Below, in pieces: positions 4,995 through 17,474 of a DNA stretch of 39,399 nucleotides (positions are counted from its first letter, which is position 1; the number at the start of each line of letters is the position of its first letter). The notes under the pieces were generated by a model, which did not search any database, had not been told where the DNA came from, and worked only from the letters and a program-made list of their open reading frames with translations. The position numbers were made by a program, and so were the translations under genes. The DNA lies in sequence record KX467643.1; one strand, written 5' to 3'.

Positions 4995-5000
4995 TTATTT

Positions 5001-5567
5001 TTACCCCTTTTTCGTTTTCGTTAATGCTTCATATTGCGTCTTTAATTCTTCAAGTCTTGAAGGGTGTACTAGTGTTACCATGGGCTGTGGGTAATCCGAT
5101 TGTTGTAATGCTACACCTACAATTACGGCACCGTTTTTCAGCTTCGGTATTACACTTCTTAATAGGCTATAATAGACTCCTTGAGATGTTGAGAACAAGT
5201 ACACCTCCTTTTTATGGTTATTTACTTCCTTTATTAGGTCGATTGGTATGGTCTGATTGTTTGTGATCTCTTTGATTAGTTTTTGTTCTAATTTACTGTC
5301 GTCTATGACGTACCCGTCTATATATGACACTTGTGCTGGTTCATTACTGTTCTTTAGTATCACGTCTCTGATTTCTACTTTTTTGATTACCAGTAAATGC
5401 CATAAGTAGTTTTTCAAGTTTTCCCTTTGGAATGGTAATGTAAACTCATCACTTTTTGCTTCTTCAACTAGTTCAACTTTTTGTGTTTCTGTGTTTGCTA
5501 TTTCAACATTTTCTTCATTTACTTCTTCTTTTAACTCCTCTTTTATTTTATCTTTTGAACTTACCAT
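5001..5567 (-). CDS. 188-aa protein, candidate OB-fold SSB (phi29 gp5-like)
   Basis: GGAGGCG RBS; acidic N-terminal tail; VEIRDVI and LFSTSQGVYYSL resemble the phi29-type SSB pattern. Confidence 0.75.
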   Translation of the reverse strand: MVSSKDKIKEELKEEVNEENVEIANTETQKVELVEEAKSDEFTLPFQRENLKNYLWHLLVIKKVEIRDVILKNSNEPAQVSYIDGYVIDDSKLEQKLIKEITNNQTIPIDLIKEVNNHKKEVYLFSTSQGVYYSLLRSVIPKLKNGAVIVGVALQQSDYPQPMVTLVHPSRLEELKTQYEALTKTKKG

Positions 5568-5791
5568 TGTTTAATCGCCTCCTTTATCTCTTCAGGGTAT
5601 GAGTCATACAATTCGCAAAATTCTAAAAAAATTCTCTCACTTTGACTTAACGCCTCAAGGGGTAACCCTTGAGGATTTACTATTTTTTGACATTCATCAA
5701 ACGCGGGCATTTTTGTTCTATCATAAATTGTAGCACAATTGATATTTAAATTTTTCTGTATGCGTTGGTTGTCTTCATTAATGAGTTTCAT
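5561..5791 (-). CDS. Hypothetical protein, 76 aa
   Basis: Overlaps the next start codon; plausible composition. Confidence 0.7.
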   Translation of the reverse strand: MKLINEDNQRIQKNLNINCATIYDRTKMPAFDECQKIVNPQGLPLEALSQSERIFLEFCELYDSYPEEIKEAIKQW

Positions 5792-5848
5792 GGGAAGAAA
5801 TATTATTTGAAACTTGAAAAAAACTAATGATAAAAAAAGAGAAATGAA

Positions 5849-6013
5849 TTATGCTCCTCTTCTTTGGAGATATTCTTCTAAAGCTTCTTTAATTACGTCA
5901 TTAACTCTTCTATCATGTTCTGCACAATAGACTTTTAGACGTTTTTTTAGAGACTTAGGGATGTAAATTCCAAAAGATACCTTTTCATCTTCTTTTTCTT
6001 CTTGTTCTGTCAT
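5849..6013 (-). CDS. svtR: Ribbon-helix-helix transcription regulator, SvtR (SIRV1 ORF56b)-like, 54 aa; not in the ORF track
   Basis: Translation MTEQEEKEDEKVSFGIYIPKSLKKRLKVYCAEHDRRVNDVIKEALEEYLQRRGA; the FGIY...LK.RLKVYCA...EEYLQ+R pattern matches SvtR as recalled; GGTGA RBS and own promoter. Confidence 0.85.
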   Translation of the reverse strand: MTEQEEKEDEKVSFGIYIPKSLKKRLKVYCAEHDRRVNDVIKEALEEYLQRRGA

Positions 6014-6046
6014 TTTCTCACCTAGGTTGTATTTAGTATTAATCGA

Positions 6047-6064
6047 TATTTAAAGCTTTTTCTA
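6047..6064 (-). promoter_or_regulatory. BRE-TATA promoter of the svtR-like gene
   Basis: TAGAAAAAGCTTTAAATA on the minus strand, about 34 nt upstream of the ATG. Confidence 0.7.
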
Positions 6065-6148
6065 AAAATAAGTTTAGAAGAAAGATGGAAAGAGAAGAGA
6101 GTAAAGAAACAAATTTTTTATCGAAAAATAGAAGAGTAGAAGTTTATC

Positions 6149-6162
6149 GAAAAATTTAAATA
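6149..6162 (+). promoter_or_regulatory. Strong early-type BRE-TATA promoter
   Basis: GAAAAATTTAAATA, 24 nt upstream of ATG 6186. Confidence 0.8.
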
Positions 6163-6176
6163 CCCGTTTTATATAT

Positions 6177-6923
6177 ATGTTGTTAATGCACGGTTTAGAA
6201 GTAAAACAAATGAAGATACTTTATAAGTTACCTAAAGTTTTTTTGACACCCGATTTAAATAAATTTTCTATCACAAGAAACTTTGCAGATTGTTTTTATT
6301 ACGAATCACATTCCGGACTAACGAAAGAAGGTTGTGTGATATTTAATGGTGAAATCAGAAGGACACGTGGAATCTTCTATACACCAATACCGCCCGCTTT
6401 TGAAATATCTTACAGAAGGAAAATGATAAGTGATGAAGCAGATATTAAACTAATATTAGATAGGATTAGTCTTGCTGGTGCTACTCTAAATACAGCATCG
6501 TTTCTAATTAAATGGGATAATTATGGATTTAAGCTTTACGATAAGTTCATCAAAGGAGGAATGTATGAGTTTCCTTTACTGTTTAGTCAAGGACATCTAT
6601 ATGTTTACAACATCCCTAGGGTGAGGGAGGCATATAGGATTATCTATGAAAACGATAACCAAAAGGAGGAAATTGATAGTGAGATGTTTGAAGAGATTAA
6701 CGAATTTAGCGTATACAATCATGCTATCAAGTTTGATAAGAAAGTGCTGAAATTAAAAGAATTGTACGTTTCACCTGGTCAAGGAGTAGTCATATATACA
6801 CTAGATGACGTCACACTTGTTTCAGAGTCACAAGACCACGAGAAAGTCGAGAAATTTGTGTATAAGAATTCGTGGATACTGTTTTCACATCGTGCCCCAC
6901 GTAACCAAGATCAAAGAGATTAA
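6177..6923 (+). CDS. acrIIIB1: Anti-CRISPR AcrIIIB1 homologue (SIRV2 gp48 family; type III-B inhibitor)
   Basis: EVKQ..LP.VFL...LNKF.I.+NF..C.YY.S.SG.T.EGCV, YEFPL, QGHL.VYN.P, YNH...F.K.VL, S.DH and W.LFSH..PR match the AcrIIIB1 sequence as recalled; about 245 aa; true start probably 6186. Confidence 0.85.
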   Translation: MLLMHGLEVKQMKILYKLPKVFLTPDLNKFSITRNFADCFYYESHSGLTKEGCVIFNGEIRRTRGIFYTPIPPAFEISYRRKMISDEADIKLILDRISLAGATLNTASFLIKWDNYGFKLYDKFIKGGMYEFPLLFSQGHLYVYNIPRVREAYRIIYENDNQKEEIDSEMFEEINEFSVYNHAIKFDKKVLKLKELYVSPGQGVVIYTLDDVTLVSESQDHEKVEKFVYKNSWILFSHRAPRNQDQRD

Positions 6924-6974
6924 CATTTTTTTATGATTCTTCTTAATCGAGAAAAATGTTTCTAGAGATTTGTC

Positions 6975-6988
6975 GAAAAATTTAAATA
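6975..6988 (+). promoter_or_regulatory. Strong early-type BRE-TATA promoter
   Basis: GAAAAATTTAAATA, identical to 6149-6162; 21 nt before ATG 7009. Confidence 0.8.
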
Positions 6989-7008
6989 TTTATTTTGTGT
7001 ATTTTTAA

Positions 7009-7239
7009 ATGATAAACATGGGTGGGAAAACATTAATTATAAATTGGGAAAACCCGTTAAATAGAGATGCATATACGGAAATAGGAAAATTGATGGTGTT
7101 AGTTTTGCCGTATGTAATTAATATTGAGATTGTAGATACTGAAGGTTGTATAATGGAAATAGATGGTACAATAGAAGATGAGATAAAGGAGTTAAGTAGA
7201 TTCTTAAAGTATGTTGAAGTGTCTTTTGCAGAAGAATAA
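7009..7239 (+). CDS. Small acidic early protein, 76 aa, candidate anti-defence gene
   Basis: Own promoter, T-rich terminator, next to acrIIIB1. Confidence 0.75.
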   Translation: MINMGGKTLIINWENPLNRDAYTEIGKLMVLVLPYVINIEIVDTEGCIMEIDGTIEDEIKELSRFLKYVEVSFAEE

Positions 7240-7300
7240 AAAATAAGCTATCCAATTTTTTTATAATATAAAAAGAGAAAAATAAAAAAAATAAATTAAC

Positions 7301-7600
7301 TTACTCAATTTCGATTTCTGCATTTATTGCTTCTGCTGTTTGTTCAAGTACTTTTAGTCCATTTGCATATTTTTCAAATCGTTCATTTAATATCTCATCC
7401 GCATTTTCTTTGGCATTTTTTGTTTCATATGAACTGATTGTCTCTATGTAGCCTACAAACTTTTGTTGTTTGTCTTCATACACCAAATCGTTACCTTTCA
7501 CATTTATTACCGCTTTCAATTCAGCCTCAAGTGTTATACTGTAGTCTCTTGTATTTATTTTTAGTTTGTACGAAAGGGTTTTTTGTTTTACTTCCACCAT
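7301..7600 (-). CDS. 99-aa early protein, candidate anti-CRISPR; paralogue of 8165-8452
   Basis: Own promoter at 7631-7644; visible alignment to 8165-8452. Confidence 0.8.
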   Translation of the reverse strand: MVEVKQKTLSYKLKINTRDYSITLEAELKAVINVKGNDLVYEDKQQKFVGYIETISSYETKNAKENADEILNERFEKYANGLKVLEQTAEAINAEIEIE

Positions 7601-7630
7601 TTTTGGTCACTTATATATTGGACAAATAGA

Positions 7631-7644
7631 TATTTAAATTTTTC
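7631..7644 (-). promoter_or_regulatory. Strong early-type BRE-TATA promoter
   Basis: GAAAAATTTAAATA on the minus strand (third identical copy). Confidence 0.8.
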
Positions 7645-7755
7645 TGTGTCTTTCTTCTTTTCGTTTTTTCTAACTAAAAAAAACGTGAAAAATTCCATAC
7701 GATAAAAATATTATCAGAAACATGAGAACAATTAGAGATAAAAAAAAGGAGAAAA

Positions 7756-8028
7756 TTATCTTTCATAATTAGAATATATAAGATCTATAAGGGGTGATAT
7801 CTCTTTTTCATGTTTTTTTAGTATGTCAAGGACATACCATTGATCATTATAGTCTTCAGGTTTTGCTATTATAAACAATTTTACTAATTTTTCCATAAAT
7901 TGAATCCCTTTTATGTGTCCAAATCTTTCATACCACCACTGTATGAATTCAACATTTTCTGTAGACATATAAAAAAATTTATCATTAATTTTAACATATT
8001 TTTCCCCAAATTCTATCTGTTCATTCAT
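7756..8028 (-). CDS. 90-aa early protein, candidate anti-defence gene
   Basis: Own promoter (GAGAAATCTTTAAATA, 8063-8078) and GGGGA RBS. Confidence 0.8.
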   Translation of the reverse strand: MNEQIEFGEKYVKINDKFFYMSTENVEFIQWWYERFGHIKGIQFMEKLVKLFIIAKPEDYNDQWYVLDILKKHEKEISPLIDLIYSNYER

Positions 8029-8062
8029 ACTTCTATCCCCTAATTATCATTAGAAAAATAGA

Positions 8063-8078
8063 TATTTAAAGATTTCTC
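8063..8078 (-). promoter_or_regulatory. Early-type BRE-TATA promoter
   Basis: Shares TTTAAATATCTATTT with the promoter at 7624-7638. Confidence 0.7.
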
Positions 8079-8164
8079 TATTTTTTGATTCATGAAAAAA
8101 TGGACAACTTTCCAGATAATATCCAAAACTTGAGAAAAATTATGTATAAAAAAAAGAAATTGAC

Positions 8165-8452
8165 TTAATCAACTTCTATCATTAGTCCTGTTTTTTCCAA
8201 TTCTTCAAATCCTCTTTTTATTTGTTCTATTCTTTTGTCCATTTCCATAGCAATTACATTTATTTGCTCTTTTATTAATTCGTGTCTTATTGTCTCTAAA
8301 ATTCCTACCTCTTTTATTAAATTTATGCTGTGTTGTACTTCACTGTTTTTTACGTTGAAGACCACTTTCGTTTCACAATCCAAAAAAACTATTCCGTTTG
8401 TTGAATTTACCTTAGCTTTACACTCAAGCTTTTTGGATGTTATTTCCGCCAT
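8165..8452 (-). CDS. 95-aa early protein, paralogue of 7301-7600
   Basis: Own promoter (GAGAAACCTTTATATA, 8483-8498); same AATATATAAGTGACC leader as 7301-7600. Confidence 0.8.
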   Translation of the reverse strand: MAEITSKKLECKAKVNSTNGIVFLDCETKVVFNVKNSEVQHSINLIKEVGILETIRHELIKEQINVIAMEMDKRIEQIKRGFEELEKTGLMIEVD

Positions 8453-8922
8453 TTTGGGTCACTTATATATTCTAATTATATATATATAAAGGTTTCTCTA
8501 TCTTTCTTTTTATCGAATTTTCGTTTTCAATTATGTAGAAGGAGCTGGAATATTATTTCAAAATTGAAAAAAAGTTTGAATACTAATTTATTCACTCAAT
8601 TTAAGGAAACAAAAAAGAATTCAAACAAAAAATCTATTGTTTCAAATACTATTTCAATGACTTTATAATCTATACATAAAAATAATCAGAGTGTAATGTA
8701 GTGAATTGGATAAATTTCTGTTAAAAGAGTTTTCACATTTGGGCTAACCCAAACGACAAAAGTTTTTTCTTTAAAAATGATTTTACGCCCTTCTTTTGCC
8801 TAAAACTTAGGCGGGATAAGGGGAAAAATTGCAAGTTAAGGGTTTAAAAATATTTCTAGTAAAATAACGAGTGTTGTTAAAAAAGATTTTTGTATCCAGA
8901 GTGAAACTAATACTATCTTCTT

Positions 8923-9126
8923 TCAATTATCTAAAAGATTTTTCTGAGTAACGAGAGAAAAATTTTTTATTATTTTTGGGATATTTTGAATCGGAACATA
9001 ATTGAATATTTCTACTGAACCATTTCTTATTAGTTTCACGCTTACAAACAAATTATTGTCTTTTATTTCGATATTTAGTATCTCATATTCTTCTTTCATA
9101 GAATAATACTTATTCAGTATTACCAT
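8923..9126 (-). CDS. Hypothetical protein, 67 aa
   Basis: ORF track; plausible beta-rich small protein; no clear RBS. Confidence 0.55.
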   Translation of the reverse strand: MVILNKYYSMKEEYEILNIEIKDNNLFVSVKLIRNGSVEIFNYVPIQNIPKIIKNFSLVTQKNLLDN

Positions 9127-9205
9127 TTAAAGCAAAATTCTCGATATTACCAAATTGACTGTAATATTATCCAAAACTTGAGAAATATAGTGAATAAAAA
9201 TAAGT

Positions 9206-10885
9206 TTAATAGTGAATGGTGATTATTCCATTATATTCGTTTTCGATAAAATTCATTTTTTTCACCGATTGTTTTATGAACAAGTCATGGTTATAAATAA
9301 TATCCAATACGTATCCTTTTTGTTTATTTTGTGATACTCTCATTACTCTACCAATCCTTTGTATTAATTTGATTCTGCTTTTCCCCTGTGTTAATAATAC
9401 TACTAACCTTAGATTTGGAATATCTAAACCTTCATCTGCTAAAGAAGTCGATATTAATACTTGTAACTTTTCATTTTTCAAAGCTTCAATTTTTTCCATC
9501 CTTTCTTCTAGTTTTGTCTTACTTGTCACAAAGTCTGCAATAATTCCATTTTCTCTCATTATTTCGGCTAGTTTTCTAGCTACTGTTATCCTCCTTACAA
9601 TTATTAAACACGGGTATTGGTTTAATTGTTTTATTTTGTTAATGATTTGCTTGTTTGTATTTGGTGAATGCTCAAATGATCTTAACAGTGAAGAGTAATA
9701 TTTAGCAAAATTTTCAGGGTCTTTATTATCATCTAAATCTTTTATTTTCAGTTTTAGTTTTTTAGGAATTTCTGGAATATACCTTATATATTCTATAGGT
9801 ACTAAATACTTGTTTTTAACTAATTCGTTATAATCTATTGTATATGATATTTTTCCTAACAATCCTTGTATTTCTAACTCTTTTCCGTCCTCTCTTAATG
9901 GGGTGGCGGTCAATCCTAAACGTATTGAATTTGGTGAATCCAGGAGTAGTGATTTCACAATATTTGCAGGAGTATGATGGGCTTCATCTACAATTATCAG
10001 ATCAGCGTTAGCAATTAGCTCTTTCAATTTGTCATGTTCATTTCTCTTCTTTTTAGAGTAGTAATAGGAAATTGATAATGCTATAAAGTTACTTTTCTCT
10101 CCTTTTTGTAATTCATCAACTTCACCGGATACTAATGCAAATGGTAGATCTTCTCTTTTTGCAAAATTCTGAAATTGCTTTAGTAAAGTAGTGGAATTTA
10201 CGGCATATACAATTTTGGCATTAGGTTTGTTTTTTAACATTTCTAAAGCAGATAATATAGCAATTACAGATTTTCCAGAACCAGTAGGGGCTTTTATTAT
10301 TCCGTTCCCTGTTGTGTTAATATCACTAATCCACGCTTTAATACTGCTAACCTGGTAATCCCTCATTTCAAAGTTCTTTAACTGAACATTATAAAATTTG
10401 AAATTGGCAAAAGGCTGGATATTAAGTTTAGAAACGTTTTGTAATTTCCAATACAATCCTCTTAAAGTAGCAAATCCGTAATCTCTTTTCCACGCTAATA
10501 ATATTTCTTCTTCTGTATATTTCCCTTCTTTGTAATCAAATGTTTTTATTTTGTAAGTTAACAAGTTTTTGTATTTTTCTAAGTTATCGTAAATATAGAT
10601 ATAATTTCCTTTTATATATGCGTTTATAATTTCACTATCATTTTTCAAGTAGTCCATGAATGGTGAATAAATTGAATCCCCAACGTATTTGGCTAATTCC
10701 TTAACTATTTCTTTAAAATCGTCTCTCGATAGCCTTTTGACTTTGTATTCATTTATATACCATCTCTTAACACTAGGATCGAAATTAGCTATTTGTTTCA
10801 TTAAATTGGTGTAATTCAAAAAATCTTCTCTTGATAAATATTTATTTGGAGATGGTAAATATACCTTATGATTGATCTGAAACAT
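9206..10885 (-). CDS. SF2 XPB/Rad25-like helicase, 559 aa
   Basis: MRDYQ, APTGSGKS, DEAHH, GLTATP, STSLADEGLDIP, QRIGRVMR. Confidence 0.95.
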   Translation of the reverse strand: MFQINHKVYLPSPNKYLSREDFLNYTNLMKQIANFDPSVKRWYINEYKVKRLSRDDFKEIVKELAKYVGDSIYSPFMDYLKNDSEIINAYIKGNYIYIYDNLEKYKNLLTYKIKTFDYKEGKYTEEEILLAWKRDYGFATLRGLYWKLQNVSKLNIQPFANFKFYNVQLKNFEMRDYQVSSIKAWISDINTTGNGIIKAPTGSGKSVIAILSALEMLKNKPNAKIVYAVNSTTLLKQFQNFAKREDLPFALVSGEVDELQKGEKSNFIALSISYYYSKKKRNEHDKLKELIANADLIIVDEAHHTPANIVKSLLLDSPNSIRLGLTATPLREDGKELEIQGLLGKISYTIDYNELVKNKYLVPIEYIRYIPEIPKKLKLKIKDLDDNKDPENFAKYYSSLLRSFEHSPNTNKQIINKIKQLNQYPCLIIVRRITVARKLAEIMRENGIIADFVTSKTKLEERMEKIEALKNEKLQVLISTSLADEGLDIPNLRLVVLLTQGKSRIKLIQRIGRVMRVSQNKQKGYVLDIIYNHDLFIKQSVKKMNFIENEYNGIITIHY

Positions 10886-13617: not shown

Positions 13618-13702
13618 ATGTCACTAATAAAATTATTACATCACAAATTTAAAAACTTTGTATTACCCACAAGTTTAAAAATGTGATATCACAATTATAA
13701 AT

Positions 13703-16755: not shown

Positions 16756-16860
16756 TCACCACCTCATAATGGTTTTTTTTGAGGGAATTTCCATTGTGAT
16801 TACCTTTAAATAATGGTTATATGTGGAAACAGATTTTAATTTTATGTTCCTTGCCACCAT
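16756..16860 (-). CDS. Unannotated 34-aa ORF similar to the MCP1 N-terminal arm
   Basis: MVARNIKLKSVSTYNHYLKVITMEIPSKKTIMRW; ATG overlaps the MCP2 stop (TAATG); stop lies in the MCP1 RBS. Confidence 0.55.
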   Translation of the reverse strand: MVARNIKLKSVSTYNHYLKVITMEIPSKKTIMRW

Positions 16861-17474
16861 TATAACCCCCTCTCAATATCCTCTAATGCTTTATAAGCAC
16901 TCTCCATTGAACTGAACGTACCAGTACCCGCATAATGCGGTGTAACCGTCGGTACCTTGGTTTTCATTAATACACCAGCGTAACTGTTGGGTAATGCAGG
17001 CATACTTGTTACGATGTTGTCAACTGTTTGTACTACATTAGTTGGGTCTAAAGTTACTGAACCGATTTGCTCTGCAACTGCTGGTACAAGTTCCTTCAAT
17101 TGATTCCCGACTTCCGCAAGTAACGTTTTCACAGTCATAGCAGGCACACCTCTAGCCACATATTTTGTAACAAGGAATGAAGCAGTTTCTTTATGTGTCA
17201 AGTATACGGCGTATATAGCCTCATTGACTAATTGCCATAATGGAAATGTGGCACCTGCACCGGCTAATTTCACAAGAGTAGGTCTTAGTGCATTGTGCAT
17301 TTTATTGTATATTTCAACGAACACGTCATTGTAGTTACTATACATATTCTCTACTAATTGTTGTGCGTACTTCTCACCCATGTAGTTCACGAAGATTCCG
17401 TAGAGCTTACCTTTATACCTAGTTGATGTATCGTTCCTTACATCGATTTTCTTATGTGATTGTCTACCCGCCAT
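16860..17474 (-). CDS. mcp2: Major capsid protein 2 (betalipothrixvirus)
   Basis: MAGRQSHKKIDVRNDTSTRYKGKLY..., 204 aa; matches SIFV/AFV3 MCP2 as recalled. Confidence 0.92.
   Translation of the reverse strand: MAGRQSHKKIDVRNDTSTRYKGKLYGIFVNYMGEKYAQQLVENMYSNYNDVFVEIYNKMHNALRPTLVKLAGAGATFPLWQLVNEAIYAVYLTHKETASFLVTKYVARGVPAMTVKTLLAEVGNQLKELVPAVAEQIGSVTLDPTNVVQTVDNIVTSMPALPNSYAGVLMKTKVPTVTPHYAGTGTFSSMESAYKALEDIERGL

What the first reader, a model, noticed from the sequence alone, without database searches (positions are those of the whole stretch)
5800..9185. Five copies of a 22-23-bp motif mark cassette boundaries in the anti-defence island
Seen (+ strand): ATATTATTTGAAACTTGAAAAA (5800), ATATTATCAGAAACATGAGAACA (7708), ATAATATCCAAAACTTGAGAAAA (8116), ATATTATTTCAAAATTGAAAAA (8550), ATATTATCCAAAACTTGAGAAA (9164). 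All have the same orientation and are intergenic. On the minus strand each follows a T-rich terminator-like run and precedes the next gene or promoter. Inference: either an upstream activator/Aca-type operator, or homology anchors for swapping single-gene Acr cassettes between viruses, an integron-like island without an integrase.
Basis: partly seen in the sequence, partly recalled or inferred. Interest (0 to 1): 0.68.

Follow-up and report, generated by a model that had tools for sequence, protein, structure and literature searches.

The report
Conserved box after early-gene terminators
The five repeats are real: each is the far half of a roughly 45-letter module lying just after a gene's stop signal in this archaeal virus (SIFV2), shared with related filamentous and rod-shaped viruses, most likely an end-of-transcription boundary marker that also gives matching sequence for swapping anti-defence genes.

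Summary
The window is the complete SIFV2 genome (KX467643). They are not SIFV2-specific. A matrix built from them finds the box in SIFV, AFV9, AFV3/6/7/8, uncultured relatives and the early-gene arrays of the rudivirus SIRV1. A strict form is absent from every Sulfolobales genome held.

The box is the distal half of a module: T5-8 run, AT, 5-6 bases, ATT, TTTYTCA, 1-3 bases, TTT, 3 bases, ATAWTAT. In betalipothrixviruses it starts a median 26 nt after a same-strand stop codon. Its distance to the next promoter varies.

In tandem gaps, 40 unique copies point with the upstream gene and 3 against. About 8 lie in convergent gaps, one of them a 45-nt gap with no room for a promoter. At most 1 lies in a divergent gap. 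Early promoters of gp12, gp13 and gp14 work without it.

It therefore belongs to the 3' end of the upstream unit. My best reading (0.5) is a fail-safe terminator or insulator. A distal operator is less likely (0.22), because AFV9 keeps the box without an SvtR homologue.

Cassette swapping is real: gp15 and gp17 are 64-67% identical to SIFV, inside flanks of 92-100%. However, crossovers also fall in promoters. No RNA data exist.

The scan has a similar note on other DNA (s1-165015).

The parts
5800..5848 (-). Boundary module 1: T7 run after the gp12 (SvtR homologue) stop, plus the 22-bp box at 5800-5821. It is followed by the early promoter of the gp11-gp10-gp09 unit.
   Evidence: The box scores 28.6 bits and starts 27 nt after the stop. 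In SIFV the ATAATAT half of this copy is deleted.
7708..7755 (-). Boundary module 2: T8 run after the gp16 stop, plus the box at 7708-7730.
   Evidence: It is 97.9% identical to SIFV, while the adjacent gp15 cassette is 64-76% identical. A 47-nt match to AFV9 7950-7996 covers T-run plus box.
8116..8164 (-). Boundary module 3: T8 run after the gp17 stop, plus the box at 8116-8138.
   Evidence: Metagenome contig joints occur at 8116 and 8139.
8550..8571 (-). Box copy 4, about 35-60 nt beyond two T6 runs that close the conserved non-coding block downstream of gp18.
   Evidence: A box at the same position is kept in SIFV, L011, L013 and L014. Homology to AFV9 ends at 8574, and a 96-nt SIFV insertion abuts it.
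9164..9205 (-). Boundary module 5: T5 run after the helicase gp19 stop, plus the best-scoring box at 9164-9185.
   Evidence: The box scores 31.5 bits. It is conserved after the helicase gene in SIFV, AFV9, L011, L013 and L014.
7240..7300 (.). Convergent gp14/gp15 gap. Each strand carries a T7-8 run and a shortened box, and the two share one ATAATAT/ATATTAT.
   Evidence: 8.5 and 5.0 bits. Full-strength equivalents occur in the convergent gaps of AFV9, L011 and L060.
8631..8652 (+). Reversed, degenerate box-like sequence inside the 3' part of the non-coding block.
   Evidence: It corresponds to AFV9 8558-8579 (14.4 bits) and to the minus-strand copies of L011, L013 and L014. It is conserved in alignment A3.
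7301..7707 (-). Exchanged cassette: gp15 (AcrIA) with its promoter (TATA/BRE 7629-7645) and linker.
   Evidence: The CDS is 63.7% and the promoter plus linker 75.7% identical to SIFV, between flanks of 98-100%. The linker carries a 12-nt indel.
8165..8549 (-). Exchanged cassette: gp17 with its promoter (8480-8497) and linker.
   Evidence: The CDS is 67.4% and the promoter plus linker 85.6% identical to SIFV. Divergence starts at the TATA box. Metagenome contigs replace 8139-8477 and 8160-8450.
5849..6013 (-). gp12, a 54-aa ribbon-helix-helix protein and SvtR homologue. It is a candidate regulator, but probably not the box's binder.
   Evidence: PDB 2KEL E=2.3e-13; Pfam 56B_RHH E=1.8e-13. No homologue in AFV9, AFV6 or L011/13/14.

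Best explanation
The 22-bp box is the sequence-specific distal half of a roughly 45-bp 3'-end boundary module. The module reads: oligo-T run, AT, 5-6 nt, ATT, TTTYTCA, 1-3 nt, TTT, 3 nt, ATAWTAT. It closes single-gene (or single-RNA) transcription units in the early/anti-defence region and after the helicase gene.

I propose that it acts in cis on RNA polymerase arriving from the upstream gene. The first T-run is the primary archaeal terminator. The box supplies a second TTTTTYT-type tract and a third T-tract, and possibly a protein-binding ATAWTAT end. Together these would act as a fail-safe, orientation-dependent terminator or insulator that keeps read-through out of the next strong early promoter or out of a convergent gene.

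The module and the early promoter are the only sequences shared by otherwise unrelated cassettes. They are therefore also the stretches in which homologous recombination exchanges cassettes between related viruses.

Shown: non-random occurrence, conservation across two virus families, locking of position and orientation to the upstream gene's 3' end, occurrence in convergent gaps, and cassette-scale mosaicism. Inferred: termination or insulation as the activity, and any protein partner.
For: - Occurrence: 5 copies against 0.03 expected.
- Upstream conservation: it continues into the T-run at a fixed spacing.
- Distances in betalipothrix-like genomes: the box starts a median 26 nt after a same-strand stop (IQR 20-36), while the distance to the next start ranges from 8 to 160 nt. 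The SIFV and SIFV2 linkers differ by a 12-nt indel.
- Orientation in tandem gaps: 40 with the upstream gene, 3 against.
- Convergent gaps: full modules after both genes of convergent pairs in AFV9 and L011. In L060 one module fills a 45-nt gap between ORF137 and a convergent FkbM methyltransferase gene. In all, about 8 convergent copies against at most 1 divergent, although divergent gaps are twice as numerous.
- Early promoters without the box: the gp12/gp13 divergent promoters and gp14.
- The only copy without an upstream ORF (8550) follows a conserved non-coding block that ends in T6 runs.
- TTTTTYT is the reported Sulfolobus/SSV1 termination signal (PMC9608457, citing Reiter 1988).
- Mosaic identity: 64-67% cassettes between flanks of 92-100%.
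Against: - No RNA data exist for this virus, so no 3' end has been mapped.
- Only 4 of 22 SIFV2 gene ends with a gap of 25 nt or more carry the box. Others, such as gp13 and gp31, have T-runs alone, so the box is not needed for termination in general.
- In rudiviruses the box lies a median 71 nt from the stop. There it is contiguous with a conserved block that runs to the BRE/TATA, which looks more like a promoter-upstream element.
- A strict form is absent from all host-order genomes held, so it is not a generic host terminator.
- One strong copy (AFV9 12667) lies upstream of a divergent gene, inside a coding region.
- The copy after gp12 is half-deleted in SIFV.
- Gene calls in uncultured contigs came from a crude ORF caller, and related viruses are not independent samples.
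Confidence: 0.5

Rival explanations
1. Distal operator or upstream element of the next early promoter. A viral ribbon-helix-helix protein (the SvtR homologue gp12) or a host factor such as Sta1 binds the box. It then activates the early BRE/TATA promoter 40-70 bp downstream, or spreads onto it to shut it off, in the manner of an Aca.
For: - gp12 is an SvtR homologue with a conserved DNA-reading strand.
- SvtR's best site lies about 80 bp upstream of its target's TATA, and spreading has been proposed (PMC5569661).
- Two copies fall within 2-3 mismatches of the published SvtR consensus.
- In SIRV1 the box is contiguous with the conserved early regulatory block upstream of the BRE/TATA.
- The box-to-start distance has a median of about 88 nt in both virus groups.
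- The box is virus-specific.
Against: - The SvtR consensus is near chance genome-wide: 33 hits against 24 expected.
- The matrix gives no listed hit (8.2 bits or more) in the SIRV1 gp08 or gp30 upstream regions, the known SvtR targets.
- AFV9, AFV6, L011/13/14 and L060 keep the box without an SvtR homologue.
- Early promoters of gp12, gp13 and gp14 lack it.
- About 8 copies lie in convergent gaps, one with no room for a promoter.
- The box is not an inverted repeat and does not overlap the core promoter.
- Spacing to the promoter is not kept even between SIFV and SIFV2.
Confidence: 0.22
2. The box has no activity of its own. It is a hitch-hiking relic of the cassette flanks, kept similar by repeated duplication, gene conversion and recombination. 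It matters only as homology for cassette gain, loss and exchange.
For: - Cassette-scale mosaicism between SIFV and SIFV2.
- gp15 and gp17 are paralogues at 30% identity.
- Metagenome joints at box edges: 7680 to 8116, and 8139 to 8477. A low-depth contig joins 5823 to 9224, which would remove the whole island between two boxes.
- The box is absent from hosts.
- One copy is decaying in SIFV.
Against: - The same core positions stay invariant across Rudiviridae and Lipothrixviridae, next to unrelated genes, while the spacers vary.
- Strict orientation and spacing to the T-run are kept.
- The 860-bp SIFV gp14/gp15 insertion and the 96-nt insertion are bounded by other repeats, not by the box.
- The gp17 crossover lies at the TATA box.
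- 22 bp is short for efficient homologous recombination.
Confidence: 0.15

Closest known systems
Archaeal oligo-T intrinsic terminators, including the Sulfolobus/SSV1 TTTTTYT signal (Reiter et al. 1988, as cited in PMC9608457)
   Same: It lies on the non-template strand just after stop codons. It begins with a T5-8 run. The box itself starts with a TTTTTCT/TTTTTCA tract and holds another T3-4 tract. Several consecutive T-tracts are typical.
   Different: About 12 non-T positions (C, C, A, the G/A before ATAWTAT, and the ATAWTAT end) are conserved across two virus families. Most other gene ends in the same genome have T-runs without the box. The box is absent from host genomes.
Consensus early regulatory sequences of archaeal-virus anti-defence genes (Bhoobalan-Chitty et al. 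2024, PMC11065993)
   Same: The genes and the island are the same. Conserved non-coding sequence flanks unrelated small genes. In SIRV1 the box is contiguous with that conserved block.
   Different: That work centres on the BRE/TATA within 100 bp upstream of start codons and stresses that flanks differ between viruses. In SIFV2 the box lies 88-130 bp upstream of three of the starts, is shared across families, is tied to the upstream gene's 3' end, and also follows a core helicase gene. I could not see their figure logos, so overlap with them cannot be excluded.
SvtR and AvtR ribbon-helix-helix operators of rudi- and lipothrixviruses (PMC5569661)
   Same: These are AT-rich sites about 20 bp long, and a high-affinity site can lie far upstream of the regulated TATA box. 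SIFV2 encodes homologues of both proteins.
   Different: The true AvtR-type palindrome sits elsewhere (window 13680-13695). The match to the SvtR consensus is marginal. Viruses lacking SvtR keep the box. The box has no dyad symmetry.
Integron gene-cassette arrays (attC sites)
   Same: Single-gene cassettes are separated by a recurring element at the 3' end of each gene, and cassette content differs between relatives.
   Different: No integrase is annotated. The box is not an imperfect palindrome. Every cassette has its own promoter. Exchange looks like ordinary homologous recombination in conserved flanks.
Roadblock terminators of eukaryotic RNA polymerase I (a T-rich release element followed by a Reb1/TTF-I site)
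   Same: The architecture matches: a T-rich stretch followed, at a short fixed distance, by an orientation-dependent sequence-specific box.
   Different: This is purely an analogy from my own knowledge. No binding protein is known here, and no such terminator has been described in archaea.

Membership tests
Archaeal intrinsic (oligo-T) terminator | A run of 5 or more T on the non-template strand shortly after the stop codon | tested here: met
   T7, T8, T8 and T5 runs lie 5-10 nt after the stops of gp12, gp16, gp17 and gp19. T6 runs precede copy 4.
Archaeal intrinsic (oligo-T) terminator | RNA 3' ends map to the T-tract(s) | not testable with these tools
   No RNA run holds this virus. Contigs cannot show 3' ends.
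Archaeal intrinsic (oligo-T) terminator | No requirement for specific sequence beyond the T-tracts | tested here: not met
   Non-T positions of the box are conserved across 54 unique sites in two virus families. This is more than a generic terminator would need.
Aca-type or SvtR-type operator | A cognate DNA-binding protein is encoded wherever the site occurs | tested here: not met
   The gp12/SvtR homologue is found in SIFV, SIFV2 and rudivirus-like loci only. It is absent from AFV9, AFV6, L011/13/14 and L060, which carry the box.
Aca-type or SvtR-type operator | The site matches the experimentally derived consensus and known targets | tested here: inconclusive
   Two of five copies fall within 2-3 mismatches of the SvtR consensus, but that consensus gives 33 hits against 24 expected. 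The matrix does not hit the SIRV1 gp08 or gp30 upstream regions. The original footprint papers are not held.
Aca-type or SvtR-type operator | An inverted repeat that overlaps or abuts the regulated core promoter | tested here: not met
   A single box has no dyad. It lies 37-70 nt upstream of the TATA at variable spacing. It also occurs in convergent gaps without a promoter.
Integron cassette array | An integrase gene and an attI site | not tested
   None is annotated among the 69 SIFV2 genes. I ran no dedicated search.
Integron cassette array | attC: an imperfect palindrome at each cassette's 3' end, with promoter-less cassettes | tested here: not met
   The box is not palindromic, and each cassette carries its own BRE/TATA.
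Early anti-defence regulatory sequence (PMC11065993) | A strong BRE plus TATA core shared by the early genes of one virus | tested here: not met
   The box is separate from the BRE/TATA and lies 37-70 nt upstream of it. The early promoters of gp12, gp13 and gp14 lack the box.

The most novel reading that the evidence does not exclude
The T-run plus box is a sequence-specific, protein-assisted polar terminator. A host or virion-borne protein bound to the TTTYTCA...ATAWTAT box would stall RNA polymerase over the upstream T-run, as Reb1/TTF-I does for eukaryotic RNA polymerase I. This would give Ligamenvirales a dedicated insulator between tandem, very strong immediate-early anti-defence promoters. 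No roadblock-type terminator has been described in archaea or their viruses.
Probability: 0.12. Interest if true: 0.8.

Novelty: new variant of a known kind. Interest (0 to 1): 0.52.

Why it matters
Anti-CRISPR and other anti-defence genes of Sulfolobales viruses are found today mainly through their shared early promoter. A second conserved element, at the 3' boundary of the same cassettes and shared by rudiviruses and betalipothrixviruses, would give an independent landmark for delimiting such cassettes, including non-coding ones.

It would also give a concrete substrate for studying how archaeal RNA polymerase is stopped between closely packed, highly active units. And it would offer a mechanistic handle on how these viruses shuffle anti-defence genes: SIFV and SIFV2 differ by whole-cassette replacements between conserved boundary modules.

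If the box proves to need a protein, it would be the first sequence-specific terminator or insulator in archaea.

Tried and rejected
- **RNA evidence.** No RNA run holds the island, so 3' ends and expression could not be examined.
- **Rfam.** Only two sub-threshold chance hits in 5000-10000.
- **AvtR as binder.** Rejected. The exact AvtR-type palindrome sits at 13680-13695 in the gp25/gp26 gap, and the AvtR consensus does not fit the box.
- **Sta1.** Its published consensus (ATNT-N8-WNAT) is too degenerate to test and does not fit the box.
- **SvtR consensus.** A marginal lead only. The original SvtR, AvtR, Reiter 1988 and Kessler 2004 papers are not held.
- **Generic host terminator.** Rejected for the strict box: 39 hits in 185,579 species genomes, none in Sulfolobales.
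- **TATA-box reading of the ATAATAT end.** Considered and set aside. No purine-rich BRE lies upstream, no conserved sequence lies downstream, and copies occur 8 nt from an annotated start.
- **Antisense-promoter reading.** Considered on the + strand and not supported by the convergent-gap pairs.
- **Gene caller.** My ORF-based caller mis-assigned several gaps, for example AFV9 7557 and 9175, L104 9421 and L039 1462. I re-checked these by hand against annotations and ORF lists.
- **Non-coding block.** Its consensus fold is weak: -8.35 kcal/mol, with one hairpin showing compensatory changes.


Full report
[quoted passage not shown] The region holds small minus-strand genes gp11-gp19, with gp13 and gp14 on the plus strand. 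Bhoobalan-Chitty et al. 2024 (PMC11065993) list gp13 as an AcrIIIB1 homologue. They show experimentally that gp15 inhibits type I-A CRISPR-Cas, and they predict gp14, gp16 and gp17 as anti-defence genes because of a shared strong early BRE/TATA promoter. Their motif search used the 100 bp upstream of start codons.

A degenerate pattern finds exactly these five, against 0.03 expected. Four are conserved in SIFV. The fifth (5800) has lost its ATAATAT half there.

**Anatomy.** Read on the coding (minus) strand, each copy is preceded by a T-run and a short spacer. The order is: stop codon, 5-10 nt, T5-8, AT, 5-6 nt, (A)TT, then the box TTTYTCA, N1-3, TTT, N3, ATAWTAT. Four boxes start 20-27 nt after the stops of gp12, gp16, gp17 and gp19. 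The next gene's BRE/TATA follows at 37-70 nt, through a linker that shows no conservation among copies. Of the 22 SIFV2 gene ends followed by at least 25 nt of spacer, only these four carry the box. Weak versions follow gp14 and gp15. Other ends have T-runs alone.

**Distribution.**
- A weight matrix from the five copies finds the box in AFV9 after ORF84, ORF86, ORF98 and the helicase, 18-26 nt from each stop. It also finds a plus-strand copy 20 nt after the plus-strand ORF90.
- It finds the box in AFV3/6/8 after ORF162 and in AFV7 after ORF117.
- Three uncultured betalipothrixvirus contigs (L011, L013, L014) keep it after the helicase gene.
- It also occurs in the terminal early-gene arrays of the rudivirus SIRV1, with about ten copies at 14-22 bits against a shuffle maximum of 15.4. 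It occurs in many rudivirus-like IMG/VR contigs as well.
- Across 54 unique intergenic sites the consensus keeps TAT at -12 to -10, ATT at -3 to -1, the box, and a following Ttcta.
- A strict version of the box has no match in any Sulfolobales genome among 185,579 species genomes.

The element is therefore virus-specific and spans two families of Ligamenvirales.

**Which neighbour does it belong to?** In tandem arrays the box is both downstream of one gene and upstream of the next, so other gap types decide.
- Orientation in tandem gaps: 40 unique copies point with the genes and 3 against.
- Convergent gaps, where no promoter follows, hold about 8 copies after I vetted the gene calls by hand.
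  - AFV9 ORF90/ORF84 has one full module after each stop, and so does L011 ORF77/ORF124.
  - L060 has two. One fills the whole 45-nt gap between ORF137 and a convergent FkbM-type methyltransferase gene.
  - One more lies in the rudivirus-like L127.
- Divergent gaps are twice as numerous (101 against 54) but hold at most one copy, AFV9 12667, which lies inside a coding region.
- The divergent early promoters of gp12 and gp13, and the gp14 promoter, have no box.
- In betalipothrix-like genomes the distance from stop to box has a median of 26 nt (IQR 20-36), while box to next start ranges from 8 to 160 nt. SIFV and SIFV2 differ by a 12-nt indel in one linker.
- The one SIFV2 copy without an upstream ORF (8550) follows a non-coding block that is conserved in six viruses and ends in two T6 runs. 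A box at that position is kept in the relatives.

These points place the box with the 3' end of the upstream transcription unit.

One caveat remains. In rudiviruses the box lies further from the stop (median 71 nt) and is contiguous with a conserved block running to the BRE/TATA. There it could equally be read as the far edge of the promoter region.

**Mechanism.** Oligo-T tracts terminate archaeal transcription, and TTTTTYT is the signal reported for Sulfolobus/SSV1 (PMC9608457). The module offers three T-tracts within about 40 nt. I therefore read it as a fail-safe terminator or insulator between closely packed, very active early units. The conserved non-T positions, the virus specificity and the strict polarity suggest something more specific. 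That could be a bound protein, or it could be shared descent maintained by recombination. None of this could be tested, because no RNA run holds the virus.

**The operator alternative.** gp12 is a clear SvtR homologue (PDB 2KEL, E=2.3e-13). SvtR's best site lies about 80 bp upstream of its target's TATA (PMC5569661). Against this:
- the published SvtR consensus is barely enriched (33 hits against 24 expected);
- the matrix misses the known SvtR target regions of SIRV1;
- AFV9, AFV6, L011/13/14 and L060 carry the box without an SvtR homologue.

The AvtR-type palindrome is elsewhere, at 13680-13695.

**Cassette exchange.** The identity between SIFV and SIFV2 is strongly mosaic.

| Segment | Identity to SIFV |
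|---|---|
| gp14, the convergent gap, gp16 and its promoter, gp18, T-run-plus-box modules | 92-100% |
| gp15 CDS | 63.7% |
| gp15 promoter plus linker | 75.7% |
| gp17 CDS | 67.4% |
| gp17 promoter plus linker | 85.6% |

Point mutation alone cannot produce such steps, so whole cassettes have been replaced between conserved boundaries.

Metagenome contigs add more cases. One lacks gp16, joining 7680 to 8116. Others replace the gp17 body, joining 8139 to 8477 and 8160 to 8450. A depth-3 contig joins the helicase 3' end through 36 nt to box 5800, omitting the whole island.

Not all breakpoints involve the box. The 860-bp SIFV insertion (gp14 and gp15 of SIFV) is bounded by promoter repeats. The gp17 crossover lies at the TATA box. 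A 96-nt SIFV insertion is bounded by a different 16-nt repeat. Alignments also naturally end at any conserved island. The boxes do mark cassette boundaries, but they are not demonstrably the crossover sites, and the integron comparison is only an analogy.

**Verdict.** My best reading is a conserved 3'-end boundary module that has not, to my knowledge, been described. I could not see the logos in PMC11065993. The scan holds a conceptually similar note on other DNA (s1-165015, cassettes joined by junctions of about 40 letters). I did not test that note.

Noticed in passing
window 8572-8935, minus strand (core 8703-8927): A conserved non-coding block lies downstream of gp18. It starts with ATTGAAAG (8920-8927, overlapping the gp18 stop), which is the 8-nt 5' handle of Sulfolobales crRNAs. 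It is conserved in SIFV, AFV9, L011, L013 and L014, and part of it (8758-8870) matches unannotated DNA at about 16.5 kb in SIRV5/6/7. By eye it resembles SIRV1 16770-16870, upstream of ORF1070. There is no Rfam hit. The consensus fold is weak (-8.35 kcal/mol), with one hairpin showing compensatory changes. It ends in two T6 runs. It could be a repeat-derived small RNA.
   Followed up: partly
window 5561-5791 (gp11): The annotated gp11 start (5791) puts the strong early BRE/TATA (5741-5757) inside the ORF. SIFV0012 and the AFV ORF49 genes are 49 aa, and DNA homology to AFV9 ends at 5713. The real start is probably the ATG at 5708-5710. Box 5800 would then lie about 90 nt upstream of the start, not 8 nt.
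   Followed up: partly
window 13680-13695: An exact match to the published AvtR consensus, a near-perfect palindrome, lies in the gap between gp25 (AvtR) and gp26. This is where AvtR is reported to bind in AFV6.
   Followed up: partly
L013 5180-7820 and L014 5489-8130, compared with window 5561-10885: In two uncultured relatives the block helicase, gp18 and non-coding region is inverted relative to gp11, and no anti-defence island lies between them. The non-coding end of the block carries two boxes back to back sharing one ATATTAT, which might be a footprint of inversion between inverted boxes. In AFV3/7/8 the gp18 homologue is also inverted.
   Followed up: no
window 7681-7692, compared with L004 about 8650: A 12-nt indel separates SIFV and SIFV2 in the linker between box 7708 and the gp15 promoter. 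A 96-nt SIFV-only insertion next to box 8550 is flanked by direct repeats of about 16 nt.
   Followed up: partly
run X3: A run labelled mouse gut metagenome holds short contigs 90-99% identical to parts of the island, at a 0.10 share of the words. This is probably cross-contamination or mislabelling rather than a true habitat.
   Followed up: no
L060 5150-5230: GC-rich inverted repeats (runs of C and G) lie in the 3' end of ORF89 (5147-5416), just upstream of one box-bearing terminator in a 45-kb uncultured virus contig with 36% GC. The virus was not identified.
   Followed up: no
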